Source of the DNA: Trichoplax adhaerens
Lineage: Eukaryota; Animalia; Placozoa
Reading direction: 5' to 3'
NCBI RefSeq assembly: GCF_000150275.1
Contig: NW_002060952.1
Span: 2,408,866 to 2,472,865, forward strand
Length of the DNA stretch: 64,000 bases
Position 1 is the first letter of the stretch. Each line of letters starts with the position of its first letter. Below are positions 1,773-18,789 of the stretch, piece by piece. The notes beneath the pieces were generated by a model. It searched no databases and was not told the DNA's origin. It saw only the letters and a list, made by a program, of their open reading frames with translations. A program made the translations under genes and the position numbers.

Positions 1773-4583
1773 AAGTATAAATGAGACATAAGATTGTCAA
1801 TTTTATAGCATAAAAACTAATAATATAGGAAGAAAGCTGTACTGAAATGATAATTATTTTACAAGTCCAATTTTACTAGTACTCCGTTAGTAGGTGCAAC
1901 AGCTTTCCTTCATCACTCTTTATTTGCCATTATGAAATAAGCTATCTAAGGTAGCAATAATTAGAATAAGAATTTTTTAGACTTAATAATTGACAAATAT
2001 TTCCATCATTCGATGACAATATCTAATATTAAGATATTGAGAATTTTCGTTAGGATGATTAACTGTCTTAGCTACCCAGATACAGTGTTAGAAAAATGGA
2101 TCAGAAACAATACGCACTCAATTTTCTATATATATATATACATGTAATTATTAGATTGTAGCCATGATAACAGCAACAATGATGAAAATGTCAGTTCAAT
2201 GTCTATGTTTATTATTTGTTAAGGTTGATCATAATGTTATAAAATATTAGCAGAACAAATTAAACGTGAATAAGCGGTTGTATGACAAGACTACTTGCTG
2301 TTAGTAAATGGTGTATTATGATCACATTGCTATTAATTGTAATTTTATATCATGATGGTGATATAGTACAGTAGGTAATTTAAACATTCTTATTGATTTT
2401 ATACAACCTAATACGGTTATAAAATTGCAGTAAAGTCATAGATTCAAAACTAATAGGGCATAAATTGCGCTATTTTATATATACTCCTATACCCGCCGTA
2501 TACGTTGAGCAAGGGAGACGAAATTTTATAACACCCAAAAAATGGATCTGGCTTGCAGTCGATAGCTCAAAAATGAAGAGCTACTGTGGAAATTAGTAAG
2601 ATACCTATAAAAGTTTCATCGCTCTATCCTCATTGAATATGCTTGGAATAGATTTATTATATCGTAAATCTACTTGCTATTCTATATTATCGTATTCAAG
2701 ATCTATAGCAACGATCATCATGTACCTTGCATTTATAATATTAGCTGTATTTTGATCATGCTGAAACAGGACAAGTACATGTAAATAGTTGACAATAAAT
2801 ATTCGTCAACAATAATTTTAAACATATAAAATTATAAAAAAAAATTGATTCTGCTATAACTTTTTCTTCAAAATAAGAGGTTTTTTATTATCTATACTAT
2901 ATTTCGTCTTGGTATTTATTAATTCTTACTAATAGTAACTATGAAGTAAACTTTAAAGTTACCTATTTTATGATATATAAATTTTTTGGATATGAAAACG
3001 TAGCTTTATTATATAATCAAGATATTAGTGGATCAATTTTTTATTGACTTATACTTTCCATTATAAAATCTATTGCATAGGAATGGCACAATATTGGTAA
3101 GGATAAATTCTGATTAGAATTTGATAATTAAGAAATAGGGAGTCGATTAGAGTATCAAAATAATAATATCCAAAAGTGATAAGAACATTTATTGTGTATA
3201 GCAAGACTGGCACTTGTCGACTGCCTAAATGATATTATGCAGCACCGTATTAGCCAATTTTAATTACACTTTGGTTATGTGACGATAGATAGAATTTTGG
3301 GGAGTTTTTTAAATAAAGCTATTATAAAGAATTGACTCGTGCCCATCGCTTATGTAATATTGCAATCTTTTAGCGCTGTAGAATTTATATTTTACTGAAA
3401 TACAGACTAAAGGCATCCAATCCATACTGATGATGATGATAGATGATCTCATTCTAACAGTATAACCGAAAATTTAGGCATTTTATTATCGCTGTTGACT
3501 TATCTCTATGATAGACCATTCTATAGGCATACCGCACCAGCATTCAATAGAGTATTGCTGATGTAAATTTTTCTATAACGTCTATAATTGAATTACATTG
3601 ATCACCAGTTCTCTAGCTATCTTATTAAGTTAAAAGAAGTTGATATCTGCAAGATCAGTTCTTATATTTACATCATGTATGATTTCTCTGAATTATACCA
3701 AAGATGCATGCCTAGATATCTTATGATAATCTCCAGAACGCCCTATCGGTAATAAGAATAGATATGCTAAATCTTTAATATATCTTTTTTTGTAAACTAT
3801 GGCTACATTCGGTATTCTATGCGATCAGCAATAAGATATAGGTGCAAAATCTACTGTACGTATTGTCTTTTTCCTTCGAATTATTCTGATACTGAGTGGC
3901 CCAAACATCAATACTACGGATCACAGAAAGACCAAATTTACAACAAGCGCTAATACAAAAGTCTACTTTATTAAGTATATCTATGTATATTTCATAGCCA
4001 CAATAACAAATTTTCAATGGTGCTCATAAAGTTTATTTTAATTAAAATTCGCTAAACCCATATCATTAGAAGATTATCACATCCTAATAGAGTTTATGGA
4101 CTTGTTAATCAGCTAATTATATTATGAAAAAATTTTACGAATGACCACCATTAATTATTAATTATTTAATTAGTTACTATCCTATAATCAAGCACTCTTA
4201 CTACTCAAGATTATGTGACTATAACTTCAATAAATTTTATAAACGGATAGAAATTGTCTTACCAATAAGATATAATGCACAAGTAAGGTGATGCTCCTTT
4301 CAAGAACCAAATTAATCTCGTTAATTATGGATGCAATATCTTACTATTATACAACAGAAATACCTTACTCACAGACAGTTCTTCACACAGTAATTATTTA
4401 AAATATACATATATAATAATAAATCGATTTAAATCAAATTAGAACCAGAAATCAAATAATATCTAAGAATTGATGTATTGCAAACTATTGACATGGATTC
4501 AAGTTGCAATTATTAAAGTAATATGCTATCTACTCGCATGAGCATCTCTGCAAAGAACTTATTAAGTTGCTAAAGGGTTAAGC

Positions 4584-5032
4584 TTAATGGTTTTGAAGCG
4601 GTTGCAGGATGGAATCCTTCAATTCGTCTTTAAAAGAGCGGGTCATACCTTCCGTACTATCTGTAGCACTCTCATATTTTATTGATGTATAAATAGAGTA
4701 ATTTTTGTCTCTTAAAATTGTATTACCTACTGTAATGAATATAATCTTACAATGATCGATGCCATCACCCGTACTTTCAATTATAGGAAAGTTTCGATAC
4801 CAATCACCCTCTTCAAAATTTTTATTCGCTATCACGACCACTTTATGACAAATGCGAATGAAATGATCGATGTTCCACATTTTGGTTTTACCAATAATAA
4901 AGTGTCGACCTCGTCGCAATACATTATACTTTCCAATCTTCAAGATCTCTTCAGCTATAGTTTTTGCAAAATCATGTTCTTGTCTTTCATGATAGACGAG
5001 TATCTTTGGTAATTGAAGATTCTGGTGAGTTT
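4584..5032 (-). CDS. Terminal exon encoding a TIR-like domain (second TIR)
   Basis: Acceptor tatag| at 5033, phase 1. Translation ETHQNLQLPKILVYHERQEHDFAKTIAEEILKIGKYNVLRRGRHFIIGKTKMWNIDHFIRICHKVVVIANKNFEEGDWY... follows the TIR pattern: betaA, BB-loop (RDFxPG-like RHFIIG) and the I..I..S.KVIVV.S.NF..S.W segment. Confidence 0.7.
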
Positions 5033-5825
5033 CTATATTAAACGATCAACACATATTTATTAATACTATTACCTCTTGCTAATATTATACGTTAGGCATA
5101 TATGCGTATAATGACAAACAGTGAATAATTTACACTCGGTTTTGAAGGATTGGTTGCAACCATACTATCTTCACAAGTCTAACATGGAAATTTCCATGTC
5201 GTACTACAGAAAAGTATGCGTGAGTATTCGATATTTTTAGATGTATATATAGAACTAGCGGAATTTTTTCATGTCATCATGGTTGCAATACTAACTGCAT
5301 CGCCTATACTAAACAATCAAAACATGTACATTAATACTTTTAACGGAACTAGTGGGAATCTCTGTGTGCCATCATGGTTGCAATGCCATCTGCATTGTCT
5401 ATTCGACAACTGGGATTAGAAAAATTGAATATTGCGTTGAAGTATCTAAAAGTACATACTGAATTATAATAGATATTGCCGTCTCTATTCGATGGAGGAT
5501 ATTAGCTTAGCATACTGCCAGTGTAGTATGCGATATCGAGGTATAAGATTTAGGCAACCTTATCTACTCCATACTCCATTACAGCAATCATTAAAATATT
5601 TAACTGCACTGCGAGAGATGTGTCCATAAGAGCACTTAAATATACTTTAGCTCAGATTATTTATATAACTACGCTACAAGATGTTGAATTAAATCATGAT
5701 ATTATCAGATATGGCACCAATAGATACATTAGTATGACGTTACTCTTGAAATAGGGAATAGAAATGTATAATATTTTATACTAGTAGAGATCGTTACAGC
5801 TAATAGCGTATCTCCTTTTATTTAC

Positions 5826-6317
5826 CAGGTGCTGTAGTGGGAGGGTTTTGATCTCTATTTCTTCCATTTCTCAATATCTCCATGACTTTCTTTGCTACTT
5901 CAGGCCATTCCATATAGCAATTCTCGATAACCCTTGTATCTTCCTGATCTCTATACATTGCTTGCAAGAGATTAGCATTAGGGAGGTTCTTGAATTCTTC
6001 CGTCGACAAATCGCTTAGTACAATAACCAGTTTATCGAAGATATTTTTCTTAACTAGTATAGAATCAATCACCGAACTACGGTTTTTCAATAGAAGCTTG
6101 GATAAAAATATAAGGAAATAATTCGAATTGGTAATAGCTTTCTCTATTTCTCTAACATTGCTAGCTCCTGGTAGCTGCTCTTCAGTCTTGCAAAAGTTTT
6201 CTTGAATCTTATTAATTTCTTCTTGTAAAGGACTGGCATCGCTTCTCTTCTCTTCGGGAGCATGCAATAAATATAATTGACCACTTAAAGGAACTGTCGA
6301 TGCGGTTTCTTCGGTTC
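5826..6317 (-). CDS. Internal symmetric (phase 1-1) exon encoding a TIR-like domain (first TIR)
   Basis: Acceptor cacag| at 6318 and donor GTAAAT at 5825; 492 nt open. Encodes GTEETASTVPLSGQLYLLHAPEEKRSD...EEQLPGASNVREIEKAITNSNYFLIFLSKLLL...KLVIVL, with a BB-loop LPG and the IEKAI.NS..FLIFLS motif. Splices in frame to the 5032 exon. Confidence 0.7.
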
Positions 6318-6439
6318 CTGTGACATAAATAGGACAAAATGGCTGTTAAATAACGATTAGGTAAATAAATTATCACATTCGAGCGGCGGCTAGTATCACC
6401 CATTTTGGGAAGGCGAAAAAAATAAATTTAAACGATCAT

Positions 6440-7390
6440 AAGGCACACAAATCATCGTTAAGAGTAGTAGCTGAAGAAAAAGTGAAATGATAAAATTGCT
6501 ATCGGTAGTGAATGAGGACTGGGAAAATAGATTATAACTTTATTAGGGTATCGATTGCTAATCCTCGTTCCTGCAAGGCAAAAATGGCGCAACTGAACGA
6601 ACAGGGGAACGTACATAATCGCCTGGAACAACAGCGGTTAGAAAGCGAAATGATGACTGTCGATAGTGGATGAGAAACAGGGAAGCAGATTGTAACTTAG
6701 AGCATGGACTGCTGCTCGTCGTTCTTGCAAGGCAATGATGATGAAATTGAATGACTTGGTGTCCATACGTACTGATACTCTTTGCTATGGGAAGGCAACA
6801 ATAACGGAATAATAATGAAACAGAATGATGACTACTGTCAGTATCTATAGAGCAATAGCGCTTGTAAAGTAAGATGATAAAACTGCTGTCGATAATGAAT
6901 AAGGAGGACTAGATAAATAAACTATTACTTAGAGTAGCCAATGATACTCTTCGTTCAAGGAAGGCCAAAGTTATACAGTCGAACGATGACTGGATACATA
7001 CCCTGTACATACATTATCACTTAGAGCAGTAGCTGATGAAAAAAGTGAAATGATGACATAGCTATCAACCATCGAAGTAGGACTAAGAAAATAAATCGAT
7101 CATTACTTAGGGTAGCGACTGATATTTCTTGCTCTGGAAAGTCAAAATTAACAAAATTAAATGACGGCTGGGTGTATACTGCAGATAAGCACTTAGAACT
7201 AAGAACTGAAGCTGGTAAAATGGGAAAATGATGAAACTACCGACAGTGAATAAGGACTAAATCACTAGATGGCGACTGAGAATAGGGACTGATACTCTTC
7301 GCTAGGGAAGGCAAAAGTGACGAAATCGCGACTAAATAACTAGATGGATAAAAATATGGGCCAGAGCAGTGGCTAATCGTCTTCCCTCTT
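6440..7390. repeat. Degenerate tandem repeat of ~160-220 bp (about 5 units) carrying intact and decayed 27-nt and 12-nt minus-strand micro-exon candidates
   Basis: Blocks atgataaaa..gtgaatgaggact..ttacttagagtagc..cttcgttc..aaggcaaa recur near 6490, 6650, 6870, 7050 and 7230. Intact AG/GT candidates are 7133-7107 (27 nt), 7032-7021 (12 nt) and 6723-6697 (27 nt). Confidence 0.65.
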
Positions 7391-7460
7391 GAACGCCAAA
7401 AAAGTTTTTATGCATTGAGTAAATGGCTAGACGCATCTAAAATAAAATAAATAACATTAC

Positions 7461-7976
7461 CAGCTACGACGCTAGTCGATGCTACCTCTTCCGTTCCTAT
7501 CAAAGCAAGGGTGAAATTAATAAAATTAGAACAGTAGTTATTACTCTACCCTTTTGAACGGTAAAAATATTAATATGCATTAAATAAATGGCTAAGCATA
7601 TATAAAATAAAGTAAATAAGTTACCAGAAACGACGCTGCTTGATGCCATTTTGTCCGTTCCTATCAACGTAAAGGTGAAATTTATAAAATCGTACCGTAG
7701 TTGATTAATAGCTACTACAACAAAATTACCATTTAAATGAGTAGCTGATCGCAAGCTATTCACTCCTGTGAAGTAAAGGTGAAATTAATAAAGTTATAAT
7801 TGATTAGTGACCACGTCAATAAGTTACCATTAAAATCCCTAGCTGATACTGAGCTTGTCATTCCTATAAAGTAAAATAAAAAAGCTTAAGTAAAGGTGAA
7901 ACGATAAAATTATCGATAATTACTAATTGCACGAAATAACTGCCTCTTTCCGTGATGATCTGTTGTGGAATACCAT
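7461..7976 (-). CDS. Five 36-nt phase 1-1 micro-exons (7976-7941, 7863-7828, 7765-7730, 7660-7625, 7496-7461), probably upstream exons of the TIR-TIR gene
   Basis: Each is exactly 36 nt, bounded by YAG and GT (four GTAA donors, one GTTA), open in phase 1, with introns of 62-128 nt. Peptides: xGIPQQIITERG / xMTSSVSARDFN / GVNSLRSATHLN / GTDKMASSSVVS / GTEEVASTSVVA. The last two match the first 36 nt of the TIR1 exon. Confidence 0.6.
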
Positions 7977-9749
7977 CTATCCCAATAAATACATAACTAT
8001 TTCTTAAGTATATTGCTACAGTACAAGAATACTGTAGTCTAAGATTGATCGCAATCAATTTTAATACAACTCAAAGAAACCTTATGTAGTTCCTATATTG
8101 AAATTATTCAAGTTTTATCGATAGCCAAACTACGTTGGTGTATTATTATTGAACTGATACACTACTAATAGTTAACTGCTGTATTCCCCCAAATAGATCA
8201 TACTGACTGAATGCAGTATATTAGTCGGAAGGAAAAAATTAATTTAGAATGGCCTATAGTTTACGTGATACAGTTGGATACAGACCAAGTTTATAATGCC
8301 CTAAAATCTAGACTATTCCCTAAATATTATAAATTGAATTATGAGCTAGATCTGGCTGAAATCTGGACTAGTAATTGTGGATTCAATTAGCTCGCCTACA
8401 ATAGAACTGTTTCTCAGTCAAGTGTTGAAATCGATTCTAATTTTGTAGTTAATGCCTCTTTGACTATTTCTTGAACGTCGACCATACCGAATATTATTAG
8501 GAAGAATAGAGTGGAATAGAGATTTAGAAATTTACTAAAGCGAGAAATTACATCCATAGTCGTGATTGCTTTCATGAGCTCAATTTCTTATTCGTCTACA
8601 GACTATCTTGCTACTTGAATGTGTTATATATCTATTAATATAGCTATTAGTATAGAGCCTATAATTCTACTTAATTAAAATAGGATGAGATTACTTCATC
8701 ATTTATGTGGAAATCTTGAAAAAAAATGATTATGCCTTTTCCTATAAGACGGATACGCTGTATCTATGCTTATGTAGCCTGTAATTTTAATGAGTTATGA
8801 AAAGGATAATTTGCCGTACAATTTACGCCTAAATCTTTCTCCAAAAAAGTTCAGCTCCACTTAATATCTGCATGCCAATGATGTACTCAGTTTTGACTGA
8901 ACAGAAATAAAATTGTTTTATGTGTTTATATGTAATTACTTTACATTGTTCAAGCATATAATATCGAATAGTTGAACCGAATGAAAAATAAATTTATTAC
9001 TCACCAAAGTCTTTAAAGCCAATCTTAGTTGCTACTCAAAAATTTCAAAAAAGCTGAAAATCTTAACTAAATTAGTTTTAGAATTTTTTTACGCTCGCTA
9101 TTTTAATGAGAAAAGGACTATTTCAGAGGTTATTGCATGACATCAGGGCTATTTATACCTATAGGTTACATCTTGAATAGAAAAATAAACTAATGAAAAT
9201 ATGACAATTTCCCCAGTTTCAGCAGGAGCACAACAGTGGCTGCAGAACCTTTAGCTATTTTGCTATTTTATTCTTTCAGCATGACCGCATGCTTATTTAT
9301 AAACACAATGTCCATATTCTCCGAATTACAGTAATATCCGATTAAAGTAGAAGCTTGGAAGTACACTAAAATCACGTAAGGTATCAGATAAAACCGATAA
9401 CTGGTTGTGATTGGTACACAAATGCATTAAATTTTCGTTTACGTAATAACATAAATAAACTATAACTATAGTGAAATATTACAATGCAAAGATTCACATG
9501 ATTTCTTGCCTACTCAACAGTTTTTTATTTGTCTGTACTTTACCTAGTGTTACTATTCTATTAATTTAAGGAACTCAATTTAGTTCCATAATTGATAAAG
9601 TTTTTCGCGGTAATTGTCCAATTACTCCAAATTGGACAAACATTAGAAATAGCAATTTATAAAGTTCACGTAGAATTGTTTATTTACAGTATATGCGTAC
9701 TTAGACCAGCCGACTCATGCTTTAAATTCCCATGCTTTATTGTAACTTT

Positions 9750-11040
9750 CTAACTAGCTCAGAAGTCTGATAATTTGTCAATAACTGAGCTTGTTTTACT
9801 CAATCTAGCGTAATGGTTTGATTTATCATATCTATTTTCTTGGTGAATCAAGATGATTAGTATTTATCTAGCAACCCATGATCTTTATTTTTTTGTCCAT
9901 GTTTCTAATAATATTAACACTAGTTCCTACTGTACTCGACTATTAACTAACATAGAAGCCTTTCAACTAGTACCTAAGCTAGTTGAATCAGATAATAGTT
10001 ATAGTGTAATGGTTTAATTCATTATATCTATTTTCTTAGAAAATCAATAACTTATATGACTAATATTTCTTAGCAACTCATAGTCTCAGTTCCATTGTCT
10101 ATATTTCTTTTCACATTCTACTTGTTAACTAACTCAGAAGTCTATCAACTAGAACTGAGTTTGCTAAATCAGATCAGGGCTATAGTGTAATAGTTTAATT
10201 CATAATATCTATTTTCTTAGCGAATCAATAACTAATATGACTAGTATCTTTTTACAGCTCATATTCTCCATTCCTTTGTCCATGTTTCTACTCTATTCAT
10301 TAACTAACTCAGAAACTTTTCAACTAGTAACTGAGTTTATCGAATCTGATAAAGGCTATAGCGTATTGGCTTAATGCACTACATCCATTTTCTTAGTGAA
10401 TCAATATGACTAGTACTTTTAGCAACTCATATTCTCAATTCCTTTGTCCGTATTTCTTCTCATAATTTACTTATTAACTAACTCAGAAGCCTTTCAACTA
10501 GTAACTGAGTTTGTTGAATCAGATAGTGGCTATAGTGCAATAGTTTAATTCATTGTATCTATTTTCTTACCGAATCAATAACTAATGTCACTAATATTTT
10601 TTGGCAACTCATATTCTCAATTCCGTTGTCCACATTTCTTCTCCTATCCTACTTATCAAGTAACTCAGAAGCTTTTCAACTAGTAACTGAGTTTACTAAA
10701 TAGATGAAGGCTACAGCGCAATGGTTTAAGTCATCATACCTATTTCTTTAGTGAATCAATAACTAATATAACACCATTTTCTACTAAATCAGTTTCTTTA
10801 TTCATGTTTTTACTCGATTTATCAACTAACTCAGAAGCCCTTTCAACTATTAATTTAGTTTTTTGAACCAGATAAAGGCTGCACTGTAATGGTTTGATCC
10901 ATCATATCCTTTTCCTTAGCGCACTAATTTGCTAATACGATTAGTGTTTTATAGCAGCTCGTATTCTCAATCCTGATTTCTGTATTTTTACTCAATTTAC
11001 TCAATTTATTAATTAACTTCGATTTTTTACTTAACTGAGT
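9750..11040. repeat. Degenerate tandem repeat of ~175-180 bp, about 7 copies
   Basis: The motif aactaactcagaagcctttcaactagtaactgag...gaatcaataactaat...gcaactcatattctcaattcc recurs near 9750, 9945, 10127, 10302, 10477, 10658 and 10824. Confidence 0.9.
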
Positions 11041-15923: not shown

Positions 15924-18789
15924 TTAGTTAAAACTATAATGACAATACTCACTTTCTTCGCCACCAAATGCGGCATCAATATCTACTCCATTAACGTACG
16001 ATGAGAATAAAGCGACATCAATAGGTTCCATGCACGATGGACAATGAAAAGATCTAACTAACCAACTATCAATACATTCGACATGATATGTGTGCATGCA
16101 AGGTAAGTAGCGAATTGGGACACCAACAACAAATTCATTCATGCATATAGCACACCTATAGTATTACGTAAAAAGAAAGCATGGACATTTTAGTAAAAAC
16201 ATGGTAAGATAACATCTTATTACACCGAAGAATTTATTAATATATAAAAAGGAATATTAAGGTTACTAAATCAATATTATATTCATCGACATCATTTGAC
16301 GAAAGACAATAGAATTTATAGCCAATCTTATACTTTAATAATACATTTCTTAGTCTGTTGTTTTAGTCAAAGCTAATAAAATGATTATCTTCAATAAAAA
16401 TTTTGCTAAATGATTACCACTTCACTCCGTGAAAAGAATATTACACGAATATTGGAACTATACAATACATGTCATATTTCAATTAAATGTAAAAAGCAAT
16501 AATGTTTTGTGTACTAATACTGCAATATATAAAAAATGTTGCACCACTGTATAAATCTCTAAAATCTCTAAAACTCTAAAATACAACTGTTAATCGTATA
16601 TGTAGGCTCTTGTTCGCTTCTTAATAATATTGAACTATTGTGTTTTATCTTCCGATTATAACAAAATATCTTATTTATTGGTACAGTACTTACAGACAGA
16701 TTTAAAAACTCTTCTAGTATGAGTTATGTTTTTCTAACATACGTATAGCAACTGTCAAAAATCTCATCTAATCCTCTATGTAAAAAATTGGGTCGAATGT
16801 TAACGCGTAGGATTAGCAAGCACCCTTCTTGTTTCGGTTTATTCTAAAGTCTCTCTACAATATACCATAGCCATTAGAGTTAATAATTATAAGTGCCGAC
16901 ATAAACCATTTGATTCGTCGTTATTGGCTTACGATCAATTGCATACTCGGAAGGAAAATCTATTACTTGCTGATACTAACAAGCATTATAATACAGTGTG
17001 CTTAAAAAACTAGGCTACTACTGATGCGTATCAACTAATGTTAAAATCGAAGTGACACTTAAAAATAGAATACGATCGTTGCACAAATATTTTTTACGAC
17101 ATCAAAAAGAGAATAATTATGTTTTTAATAGCTGTAAGGTTGTTTACAGCTATGACATTACGAATTGCAACGCGAGTAGTAGCATTTAAGTCGTCCCTTT
17201 AAAGTAGAACAGTACACAGTACGTACAGTAGTAGTAGTAATAATATAATCTTCTGAATAGGGAATAATACAGTGCAGTTATAGAAGGACTCATTAACAAG
17301 TTAAAAAAAGGACGCTATTAATTAAATAAGATTTGTTAGCTATTTTGAGTTAAGCAAGCGACTTGGCTCCTGAATTAAAAAATTTCAGTATGGATAGTAT
17401 TTATCCCCACTCATATTATTATTATTTCTATTTTCTATCAGAAAACATGTAATATTTTACATAGATCGCAGATTCATTTTACATTATTTTAAATTAGCAT
17501 GGCACTCTCCCGACAGATTCAGTAGCAAACATTTTCTTAATTATTGCTAGGAAAGGGTTTATTACAAGTCGATCGCATATGTTCGCTACGTTACGATTGC
17601 TATGATTCGTTTTAAATTAATTAATAGTACATTTTACTCTTTACCAATGCCGATTTCCAGGTTGTGAGCGATCTTGCACAATTTAATGGTAAACTGCGGT
17701 AATTGTGCAATCCGAAATTCACTTTATACTGCACCTAGGCTTAACGCTACTTTATAAAAATGACTCTGGTACAGTGCGAAATAGCAATAGGTGGAAATCA
17801 AATATAAATTAAACGCAGGCGAAATAAATTCGCTTGGAAAGCTGACTACTATGGTAAGTGAGTCGGTGTAGTAATTAACAAGCTCTGTAATTCGTTAAAA
17901 TACAGTATGTATAAGACCAAATTTACGATACTATTTGTTCGTTACGAGGACAAAATGGAAATTTACAAAAGTTTAACGACTACTCGTATGTTAACCGATC
18001 TACCTCAGTTGTATGTATTCAATATTAAAACTTTATCTGCTTAATCAGCCTTAAAAAAGAAAAAAAAGTCCCCAATACTAAAGTATCAAAATTACTGAAA
18101 GAAAAATATACGCGTATATTCCGTTTTACGGGGAGACGCTCGAAATGAAAAAATATCTATATAATAATGTATAGTACATTTATTGCATGGGTGAAAATTT
18201 ATCGCACCTCCATTTTTTAATTAATTGATCCTCATAGTGTGCTGTAGTTTACGCATGATATATTAAGGTAACAAGACGCTATAATATTTCTGATTGCACT
18301 GTTACGTAATAATTCCATAGGAAAATGAAAAAGGAATGTACAATAAAGCAAATTACGACCTTATTTCCCAATCTATTCAATTTAATTTATAACGTATGGT
18401 GTTCAATTTAGTATTTCATACACATATCTGTCTCTGAGTTTAAATGTTGATAACATCGCGTACAGTGCTGTACTGTTACTACTGTACTTTGTCGAATTTG
18501 TATATTAATTTTAGGGAGAGCTAGATGGTAGAGATGATAAAGCTAAATGATCGAACAGCGTTCCGATGCACGAAAGAATTACTACACAGTACAGTACAGT
18601 ACAATACTGTATTGCTGTATGATGATTAACAATTGAGATTATCTCATTTTTTAAAGTTTACTTACTCGTTTAGTTTTTCAGATTTATGTCCTTCGTAGGT
18701 GCCGATAGGCAAATGATCAATCATAGCCAGGCGTTGCATTAATTTCGATTGCTGCGCCTCGGAACAATGCTGTTGTTGTTGCGTTTGTT

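What the first reader, a model, noticed from the sequence alone, without database searches (positions are those of the whole stretch)
4584..7976. Micro-exon gene architecture feeding a tandem TIR-TIR protein
Seen: upstream of two TIR-like exons is a ladder of symmetric phase 1-1 micro-exons. There are five of exactly 36 nt (7976-7461), two of 27 nt (7133-7107, 6723-6697), one of 12 nt (7032-7021), and a further 27-nt candidate with a GTGAGT donor at 9031-9005. All lengths are multiples of 3 and all are open in phase 1, so any subset can be skipped without a frameshift. The 492-nt TIR1 exon is also 1-1 symmetric. Known: this layout defines the micro-exon genes (MEGs) of schistosomes, which generate protein variants by exon skipping, and TIR domains are innate-immune signalling modules. 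Inference: a combinatorial-splicing system diversifying the Ser/Thr-rich N-terminal region of an immune adaptor in an early-branching animal. The ORF track does not resolve this structure.
Basis: partly seen in the sequence, partly recalled or inferred. Interest (0 to 1): 0.85.

Follow-up and report, generated by a model that had tools for sequence, protein, structure and literature searches.

The report
Tandem micro-exons heading a TIR-TIR gene
A single-copy Trichoplax gene for a small protein with two TIR-like domains has grown a Ser/Thr-rich front end from four real, spliced 36-base exons made by tandem duplication of its own first coding bases; the other proposed micro-exons and the claimed exon mixing have no RNA support, and the public gene model is wrong.

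Summary
The window is Trichoplax adhaerens; the locus is TRIADDRAFT_59415, annotated "uncharacterized". Spliced contigs from two independent studies, one a declared RNA-seq library, join on the minus strand: a non-coding first exon (about 9123-9005), four 36-nt phase 1-1 exons (7863-7828, 7765-7730, 7660-7625, 7496-7461), the 492-nt exon (6317-5826) and the last exon (5032-4584).

The fifth (7976-7941) and the 27/12/27-nt candidates are skipped. The "27-nt" candidate is the 3' end of the first exon. AG..GT, in-frame, phase-1-open segments occur at about the shuffled number in one intron and, because of decayed repeats, at twice it in the other.

Region 7900-6282 is one tandem array with a period of about 100-165 nt. 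It holds four spliced copies, about seven decayed copies inside the 1143-nt intron, and the start of the TIR1 exon as the source copy. Relatives on metagenome contigs keep the two large exons but show no ladder; their ATG sits just after the acceptor.

TIR identity is supported only by profiles; both fold models failed. Exon skipping was not seen. Two runs hint at extra unit copies. The gene is not a schistosome-type MEG. The scan has noted duplicated symmetric micro-exons at other Trichoplax loci.

The parts
9005..9123 (-). First exon, non-coding (5' UTR). The 5' end is approximate. The GTGAGT donor follows 9005. A TATAAATA box lies at 9157-9150, about 30 nt upstream of the contig end.
   Evidence: the X15 contig covers 9004-9123 and is joined to 7863; X5 shows the same junction; no ATG in 9130-9005; sequence.
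7828..7863 (-). Micro-exon m1, 36 nt, phase 1 at its 3' end. It holds the first ATG of the mRNA (7861-7859) and encodes MTSSVSARDFN.
   Evidence: (junctions 9005|7863 and 7828|7765 in X5 and X15).
7730..7765 (-). Micro-exon m2, 36 nt, phase 1-1. It encodes (G)VNSLRSATHLN and matches m1 at 25 of 36 bases.
7625..7660 (-). Micro-exon m3, 36 nt, phase 1-1. It encodes (G)TDKMASSSVVS and keeps an in-frame ATG like the start of the relatives' exon.
7461..7496 (-). Micro-exon m4, 36 nt, phase 1-1. It encodes (G)TEEVASTSVVA. It matches m3 at 26 of 36 bases, with 26 of 30 in the upstream intron, and matches the start of the TIR1 exon at 21 of 36.
   Evidence: TRF period 165 over 7380-7690.
6318..7460 (-). 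A 1143-nt intron removed as one piece. It consists of about seven decayed copies of the micro-exon unit, anchored near 7301, 7133, 6958, 6790, 6723, 6570 and 6400.
   Evidence: junction 7461|6317 in X5, two contigs, and in X15; self-similarity 7707-6511 against 7543-6349; unit alignment.
5826..6317 (-). TIR1 exon, 492 nt, phase 1-1. Its first 36 nt (6317-6282, TEETASTVPLS) are the source copy of the repeat, with a donor-like GTCAAT at the equivalent place. The rest is a TIR_2-like domain.
4584..5032 (-). Last coding exon, a second TIR-like domain. The TAA stop is at 4586-4584. The 3' UTR continues to at least 4250.
   Evidence: junction 5826|5032; the X5 contig runs 4250-5032.
7941..7976 (-). 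It is not used in the contigs, is not a member of the repeat family, and has a weak donor.

Best explanation
This is one single-copy Trichoplax adhaerens gene with seven exons on the minus strand, for a cytosolic protein of about 360 residues: a Ser/Thr-rich, probably disordered N-terminal stretch followed by two divergent TIR-like domains.

The N-terminal stretch consists of five 12-residue repeats. Four are each encoded by their own 36-nt phase 1-1 micro-exon. The fifth is the start of the TIR1 exon.

The ladder arose by tandem duplication of a unit of about 100-165 nt. That unit held the end of the upstream intron, the acceptor, the ancestral start-codon region and about 55-60 nt of the first coding exon. 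A GT inside the former coding sequence became the donor of each copy. Equal length and phase 1-1 symmetry follow from copying one unit, not from selection for skipping.

Four upstream copies are still spliced, constitutively in the dominant mRNA. Translation starts in the most upstream one. About seven copies have decayed and now form most of a 1143-nt intron.

Shown: the exons, the junctions, the repeat homology, the single copy, and the lack of a ladder in relatives. Inferred: the direction of duplication, the TIR fold, and the role of the tail as a flexible, possibly phosphorylated extension of a TIR adaptor.
For: - Junction contigs from two studies include all four 36-nt exons in order and skip every other candidate.
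- The first exon has no ATG; the first ATG lies in m1.
- A self-similar array spans 7707-6349. TRF finds a period of 165.
- The unit alignment places decayed copies and the TIR1 exon start in register with the exons, with similarity continuing about 20 nt past the donor position.
- Pairwise identities are m1-m2 25/36, m3-m4 26/36 and m4-TIR1 start 21/36.
- No second copy of either large exon or of the array exists in the 105.6-Mb genome, by protein, DNA or profile search.
- Relatives P0002-P0007 begin with ATG 2-10 nt after the acceptor of the TIR1-like exon. Their 675-1262 nt of upstream sequence show no self-repeats. L004 and L009 carry a TIR2-like exon downstream.
- For TIR1: TIR_2 matches 6 of 7 family members, best E 1.3e-11. 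The best PDB profile hits are mostly TIR domains.
- For TIR2: the profile's best PDB hits are TLR2, TLR6 and TLR1 TIR domains, E 0.007. Protein-language-model neighbours of both exons are TIR clusters.
Against: - The RNA evidence consists of assembled contigs, which drop rare isoforms, so constitutive inclusion is shown only for the dominant form.
- Run X5 has unexplained in-frame variants around m4: a 27-nt form, and m4 followed by a near-identical copy absent from the reference.
- The window's own TIR scores are below Pfam's cut-offs (20.5 against 28 bits; 13.6 against 21.3).
- Both AlphaFold models were unusable, with pLDDT 38 and 41.
- A profile comparison of TIR1 against TIR2 found no similarity.
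- The source organisms of the relatives are unknown, so 'the ladder is specific to the Trichoplax lineage' rests on unplaced contigs.
- Intron loss that fused a former micro-exon to the TIR1 exon is not strictly excluded.
Confidence: 0.7

Rival explanations
1. MEG-like combinatorial splicing. The symmetric micro-exons are skipped in varying subsets, possibly with occasional use of decayed copies such as 7133-7107, to make many N-terminal variants of an immune adaptor.
For: All four exons are 36 nt and phase 1-1, so any internal subset keeps the frame. Candidate 7133-7107 has good splice signals, TCCAG acceptor and GTAATG donor. X5 carries an in-frame 27-nt form next to the 36-nt form of m4.
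Against: Only the all-inclusive order was assembled, in two independent studies. Exon m1 holds the start codon. No junction touches any decayed copy. Symmetry is an automatic result of unit duplication. The protein has no signal peptide, unlike MEG products.
Confidence: 0.12
2. Germline rather than splicing diversity. The array behaves like a minisatellite, so haplotypes or strains differ in the number of spliced micro-exon units and hence in N-terminal repeat number.
For: - In the DNA-like run X1, depth is about 1.5-fold in 7434-7632. Half-depth contigs there are 4-7% diverged copies of the m3 and m4 units, and one continues into a third version of the unit's intron.
- In X5, m4 is followed by an m4-like copy with 1 mismatch in 20, which is absent from the window and the whole reference genome.
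- X5 shows three different m4-like sequences.
Against: Depth of contigs is unreliable by the tool's own warning. The extra pieces are short (61-142 nt). The reference assembly may simply have collapsed a unit. X15, a diverged strain, shows the same four exons as the reference.
Confidence: 0.3
3. The micro-exons are mostly 5' UTR. Translation starts at the ATG in m3 (as in the public model) or further downstream, so the ladder has little or no protein-level meaning.
For: Exon m3 keeps an ATG in the same context as the start codon of relatives. The public model P0001 starts there.
Against: The m1 ATG is the first in the mRNA and is in frame through all junctions with no stop. All four exons stay open only in this frame; three of the four have stops in both other frames.
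Confidence: 0.1

Closest known systems
Tandem exon duplication, in which an intragenic repeat grows by copying one exon-plus-intron unit
   Same: Neighbouring exons have equal length and phase, with similarity extending into the flanking intron. All functional copies are included in the mRNA, giving a peptide repeat. Decayed copies are left in an intron.
   Different: The copied unit is the acceptor plus start-codon end of the first coding exon, so each copy needed a new donor inside former coding sequence. The exons are very short (36 nt), and more copies have decayed (about 7) than survive (4).
Schistosome micro-exon genes (MEGs; bioRxiv 10.1101/2023.06.21.545858)
   Same: Short symmetric exons whose lengths are multiples of 3, so skipping would keep the frame. 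Automatic annotation fails on them.
   Different: MEGs have 10-20 micro-exons making up most of the coding sequence. They encode secreted proteins with a signal peptide and have verified isoforms by exon skipping. Here four micro-exons make 13% of the coding sequence, the protein has no signal peptide, and no skipping was seen.
TIR-only adaptor proteins (TIRAP/MAL-type; the TIR-only proteins of placozoans listed in PMC6321704)
   Same: A small cytosolic protein made only of TIR-like domains. Profile matches go to TIRAP, TLR1/2/6 and bacterial TIR domains.
   Different: It has two tandem, mutually very divergent TIR-like domains. The window's own scores are below Pfam cut-offs. The family is tiny, with 7 representatives among 1.84 billion. 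No partner, ligand or activity is known.

Membership tests
Schistosome-type micro-exon gene (MEG) | Symmetric exons whose lengths are multiples of 3 | tested here: met
   Four 36-nt phase 1-1 exons with RNA-supported junctions.
Schistosome-type micro-exon gene (MEG) | Most of the coding sequence is built from 10-20 micro-exons | tested here: not met
   144 of 1080 coding bases lie in four micro-exons. The rest lies in exons of 492 and 449 nt.
Schistosome-type micro-exon gene (MEG) | N-terminal signal peptide, secreted product | tested here: not met
   The N-terminus read from m1-m2 (MTSSVSARDFN, VNSLRSATHLN) has no hydrophobic stretch. This is by inspection only; no predictor was run.
Schistosome-type micro-exon gene (MEG) | Protein variants produced by skipping micro-exons | tested here: inconclusive
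   Only the all-inclusive form was found in contigs of two studies. Contigs cannot show rare isoforms, and X5 has one unexplained 27-nt form.
Tandem exon duplication | Adjacent exons are similar in sequence, with similarity extending into the introns | tested here: met
Tandem exon duplication | Duplicates are included together in the mature mRNA | tested here: met
   The X15 contig holds m4-m3-m2-m1 (144 nt) plus the first exon. X5 has the same junctions.
TIR domain (Pfam TIR_2 PF13676 / TIR PF01582) | Score above Pfam's gathering cut-off | tested here: not met
   TIR1 exon: TIR_2 20.5 bits against a cut-off of 28, E 7e-4. TIR2 exon: TIR 13.6 bits against 21.3, E 0.059.
TIR domain (Pfam TIR_2 PF13676 / TIR PF01582) | Homology shown through family relatives or profiles | tested here: met
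   - 6 of 7 TIR1-family members hit TIR_2, best E 1.3e-11.
- The A2 profile's top PDB hits are Cat1 TIR, TIRAP and PdTIR, E 0.05-0.3.
- The A3 profile's top hits are TLR2, TLR6 and TLR1 TIR domains, E 0.007.
- 2 of 3 TIR2-family members hit TIR_2, best E 1e-3.
The case is stronger for TIR1 than for TIR2.
TIR domain (Pfam TIR_2 PF13676 / TIR PF01582) | Flavodoxin-like alpha/beta TIR fold | tested here: inconclusive
   AlphaFold2 gave pLDDT 37.9 (single sequence) and 40.9 (3-sequence alignment). Both are too poor for a fold search.
TIR NADase subclass | Catalytic glutamate after the beta-C strand | tested here: inconclusive
   In the HMMER alignment to TLR2 the TIR2 motif W-Y-R-N-F puts Phe where TIR enzymes have Glu. 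For TIR1 no reliable alignment covers this position.

The most novel reading that the evidence does not exclude
The micro-exon array is a live minisatellite inside a gene. Unit number differs between Trichoplax haplotypes or strains, and together with alternative acceptor or exon choice around m4 this gives individual-specific N-terminal repeat variants of a TIR-TIR signalling protein. That would be a germline-plus-splicing route to diversity in an innate-immunity-type adaptor of a very simple animal.
Probability: 0.2. Interest if true: 0.55.

Novelty: new member of a known kind. Interest (0 to 1): 0.35.

Why it matters
- It corrects a public gene model. TRIADDRAFT_59415 (251 aa) starts in the third micro-exon, invents exons inside an intron, reads through a donor and loses the whole second TIR-like domain.
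- It adds a divergent TIR-TIR protein that domain scans with standard cut-offs would miss to the placozoan set of TIR proteins.
- It is a clear, RNA-supported case of new coding exons arising from tandem copies of the start of an exon, with both the surviving and the decayed copies still visible.
- It also shows that symmetric micro-exons alone do not prove combinatorial splicing.

Tried and rejected
- AlphaFold2 on the TIR1 exon alone and on a 3-sequence TIR2 alignment gave pLDDT 38 and 41. I ran no fold search because such models give meaningless matches.
- hhalign of the TIR1 profile against the TIR2 profile gave probability 0.4%, so the two halves cannot be shown to be duplicates of each other.
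- The search for homologous proteins returned only the public model and already known metagenome ORFs. It found no Trichoplax sp. H2 model and no full-length transcript-derived protein, so isoforms could not be read from protein databases.
- Searches of the own genome for paralogous loci, by protein, DNA and profiles, found only the locus itself.
- A paper search for the locus tag found nothing. A search for Trichoplax plus microexon found only the mitochondrial cox1 case.
- I considered the X5 'go-back' joint 7497->7466 as evidence of an extra exon and rejected it. It is the ordinary m3|m4 junction aligned a second way, because both exons share AGCGTCGT.
- I did not build or search the joined (spliced) protein. 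All searches were exon by exon, by reference.
The single read-laying run used 5951 letters.
Full report
**Identity of the locus.** The window is AT-rich eukaryotic DNA, about 32% G+C. It belongs to a 105.6-Mb assembly of 1414 contigs. A database protein identical to the translated 492-nt exon is named [quoted passage not shown].

**The observation at sequence level.** These criteria are weak. AG..GT segments of 9-60 nt that are a multiple of 3 and open in phase 1 number 57 in the 1143-nt intron (shuffles 26.5 +/- 7.5). They number 20 in the 1141-nt intron (shuffles 25.6 +/- 7.3).

**RNA evidence.** One search found 20 public runs holding the stretch. I laid contigs of four runs on window 4250-10200.
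- Run X1 covers exons, introns and upstream DNA evenly without any joint. It behaves as genomic DNA.
- Runs X5 (study P2) and X15 (study P6, a declared RNA-seq library of a strain about 1-2% diverged) give the same joints.
- Read on the minus strand, the joints are 9005|7863, 7828|7765, 7730|7660, 7625|7496 and 7461|6317, each with GT..AG ends.
- X5 also gives 5826|5032. The X15 contig of the 492-nt exon carries a 13-letter loose end equal to the first bases of the last exon.
- One X15 contig of 265 nt consists of exactly 144 nt (the four 36-nt exons) plus 9004-9123.

The introns are 1141, 62, 69, 128, 1143 and 793 nt long.

- Four of the five 36-nt exons are real: 7863-7828, 7765-7730, 7660-7625 and 7496-7461.
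- The fifth, 7976-7941, is skipped. It shares only 4-8 of 36 bases with the real ones and has a GTTATT donor.
- The 27-, 12- and 27-nt candidates lie within the intron that both runs remove in one piece.
- The "27-nt candidate" at 9031-9005 has the predicted GTGAGT donor. It is the 3' end of a first exon of at least 119 nt that contains no ATG. A TATAAATA box at 9157-9150 lies about 30 nt upstream of the contig end.

**The coding sequence.** The first ATG of the mRNA lies in micro-exon m1 (7861-7859). By arithmetic the coding sequence is 34 + 108 + 492 + 446 = 1080 nt, or 360 codons. Each exon border splits a Gly codon, except the last border, which splits a Glu codon.

**Origin of the ladder.**
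- A self-comparison shows that 7707-6511 aligns with 7543-6349, and TRF reports a period of 165.
- An alignment of 13 unit anchors puts three things in one register: the four spliced exons, seven decayed copies (near 7301, 7133, 6958, 6790, 6723, 6570 and 6400), and the first 36 nt of the TIR1 exon.
- The TIR1 exon has GTCAAT where the copies have their GTAA donors. Similarity continues about 20 nt further, into bases that are coding in the TIR1 exon and intronic in the copies.
- Identities are m1-m2 25/36, m3-m4 26/36 (26/30 in the upstream intron) and m4-TIR1 start 21/36.
- The encoded units are MTSSVSARDFN, VNSLRSATHLN, TDKMASSSVVS, TEEVASTSVVA and TEETASTVPLS. 21 of the 55 residues are Ser or Thr.

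**Relatives.** A search of 1.84 billion representatives found only six relatives of 158-187 residues. All are ORFs on short metagenome or run-assembly contigs with 30-35% G+C.
- In all six the ORF reads on from a Gly codon into GT-starting bases just before its stop; in four the tail reads GK. This is what a read-through phase-1 donor would give, as in the window.
- Two contigs carry a TIR2-like exon 0.7-1.5 kb downstream, at 39% and 31% identity.
- In every relative the ATG lies 2-10 nt after the acceptor of the TIR1-like exon, in a context like that of m1 and m3.
- Contigs with 675-1262 nt of upstream sequence have no internal repeats.

The simplest history is that the ancestral gene had a UTR exon, a TIR1 exon starting with the ATG, and a TIR2 exon. 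In the Trichoplax lineage the acceptor-plus-start region was copied in tandem about eleven times. Four copies kept working splice sites and about seven decayed. My alignment confirms the homology, but the relatives suggest it is the source rather than a fusion.

**No paralogues.** Protein, DNA and profile searches of the whole genome find only this locus.

**TIR identity.**
- The window's own Pfam scores are below the cut-offs: TIR_2 E 7e-4 and 20.5 bits for the first domain; TIR E 0.059 for the second.
- Through relatives the first domain is well connected. 6 of 7 members hit TIR_2, best E 1.3e-11. The family profile's best PDB matches are Cat1 TIR, TIRAP and PdTIR.
- The second domain's three-member profile hits the TLR2, TLR6 and TLR1 TIR domains best, at E 0.007 over the BB-loop to beta-C region. 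2 of 3 members hit TIR_2.
- Protein-language-model neighbours of both exons are TIR clusters.
- Both structure predictions failed.
- The two halves cannot be related to each other by profile comparison.

"TIR-TIR" is therefore likely but not proven for the second half. In the TLR2 alignment the second domain has Phe where TIR enzymes have the catalytic Glu. That suggests an adaptor rather than an NADase, but it is an inference.

**Diversification.** No skipped form was seen, and m1 carries the start codon. Contigs cannot exclude minor isoforms. Three observations remain unexplained:
- An X5 contig has m3 followed by three other letters plus the last 24 nt of m4, then TIR1. This is an in-frame 27-nt form.
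- An X5 contig has m4 followed by an m4-like copy with one mismatch in 20, which is absent from the window and the reference genome.
- In the DNA-like X1 run, short half-depth contigs are 4-7% diverged versions of the m3 and m4 units, and summed depth in that bin is about 1.5-fold.

Together these suggest that unit number differs between haplotypes or strains, or that the reference collapsed a unit.

**Comparison with known systems.** The layout shares exon symmetry with schistosome MEGs. It lacks their signal peptide, their dominance of micro-exons in the coding sequence, and documented skipping (bioRxiv 10.1101/2023.06.21.545858). It is best filed as tandem exon duplication acting on a TIR-only protein. 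A survey of placozoan immunity genes counted 16 TIR proteins in Trichoplax sp. H2 by InterProScan (PMC6321704). This gene would probably escape such a scan. Other agents of this scan report real micro-exon genes at several other Trichoplax loci, one with the same "duplication, not mixing" reading. I did not test those.

**Public model.** P0001 (251 aa) starts at the Met of m3 and uses m4. It then strings together segments from inside the 1143-nt intron, and ends in "APGK" by reading through the TIR1 donor. The RNA contigs contradict each of these choices.

Noticed in passing
window 9939-10769: A tandem satellite with a period of about 181 nt and 4.6 copies lies just upstream of the gene's promoter. 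Each unit contains a short inverted repeat (aactcag...ctgagtt). No contig of the four runs was laid beyond about 9660.
   Followed up: partly
window 5817-5826 (minus strand): The donor of the TIR1 exon reads G|GTAAATAAAAGG, so an AATAAA signal and an in-frame stop (GK*) sit directly on the splice site. The public model ends there. In X15 the contigs on the last exon have far lower depth than the TIR1 contig. A short single-TIR form made by intronic polyadenylation is possible, but contig depth is not reliable evidence.
   Followed up: no
window 7434-7660: Runs X1 and X5 hold variant copies of the m3 and m4 units that are not in the reference genome: an m4-like exon following m4, a 27-nt in-frame form, and half-depth diverged contigs. 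This suggests unit-number polymorphism or a collapsed repeat in the assembly.
   Followed up: partly
L004, L010, L013 (one metagenome sample); also L005, L011, L012: One environmental sample carries at least three paralogues of the TIR1-like exon (P0002, P0005, P0007), while T. adhaerens has one. The source organism is unknown; G+C is 30-33%.
   Followed up: no
window 6163-6165: Runs X11 and X15 share a three-base replacement in one codon of the TIR1 exon (Ala to Met). X5, X11 and X15 share R24G at 6246. Divergence in the exon (about 1.2%) is as high as in the adjacent intron (about 1.4%), which suggests weak constraint or fast evolution.
   Followed up: partly
window 15924-16142 (minus strand): An ORF with a RING-H2-like motif (CMHTYHVECIDSWL...CPSC), probably an exon of a neighbouring E3 ligase gene.
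   Followed up: no
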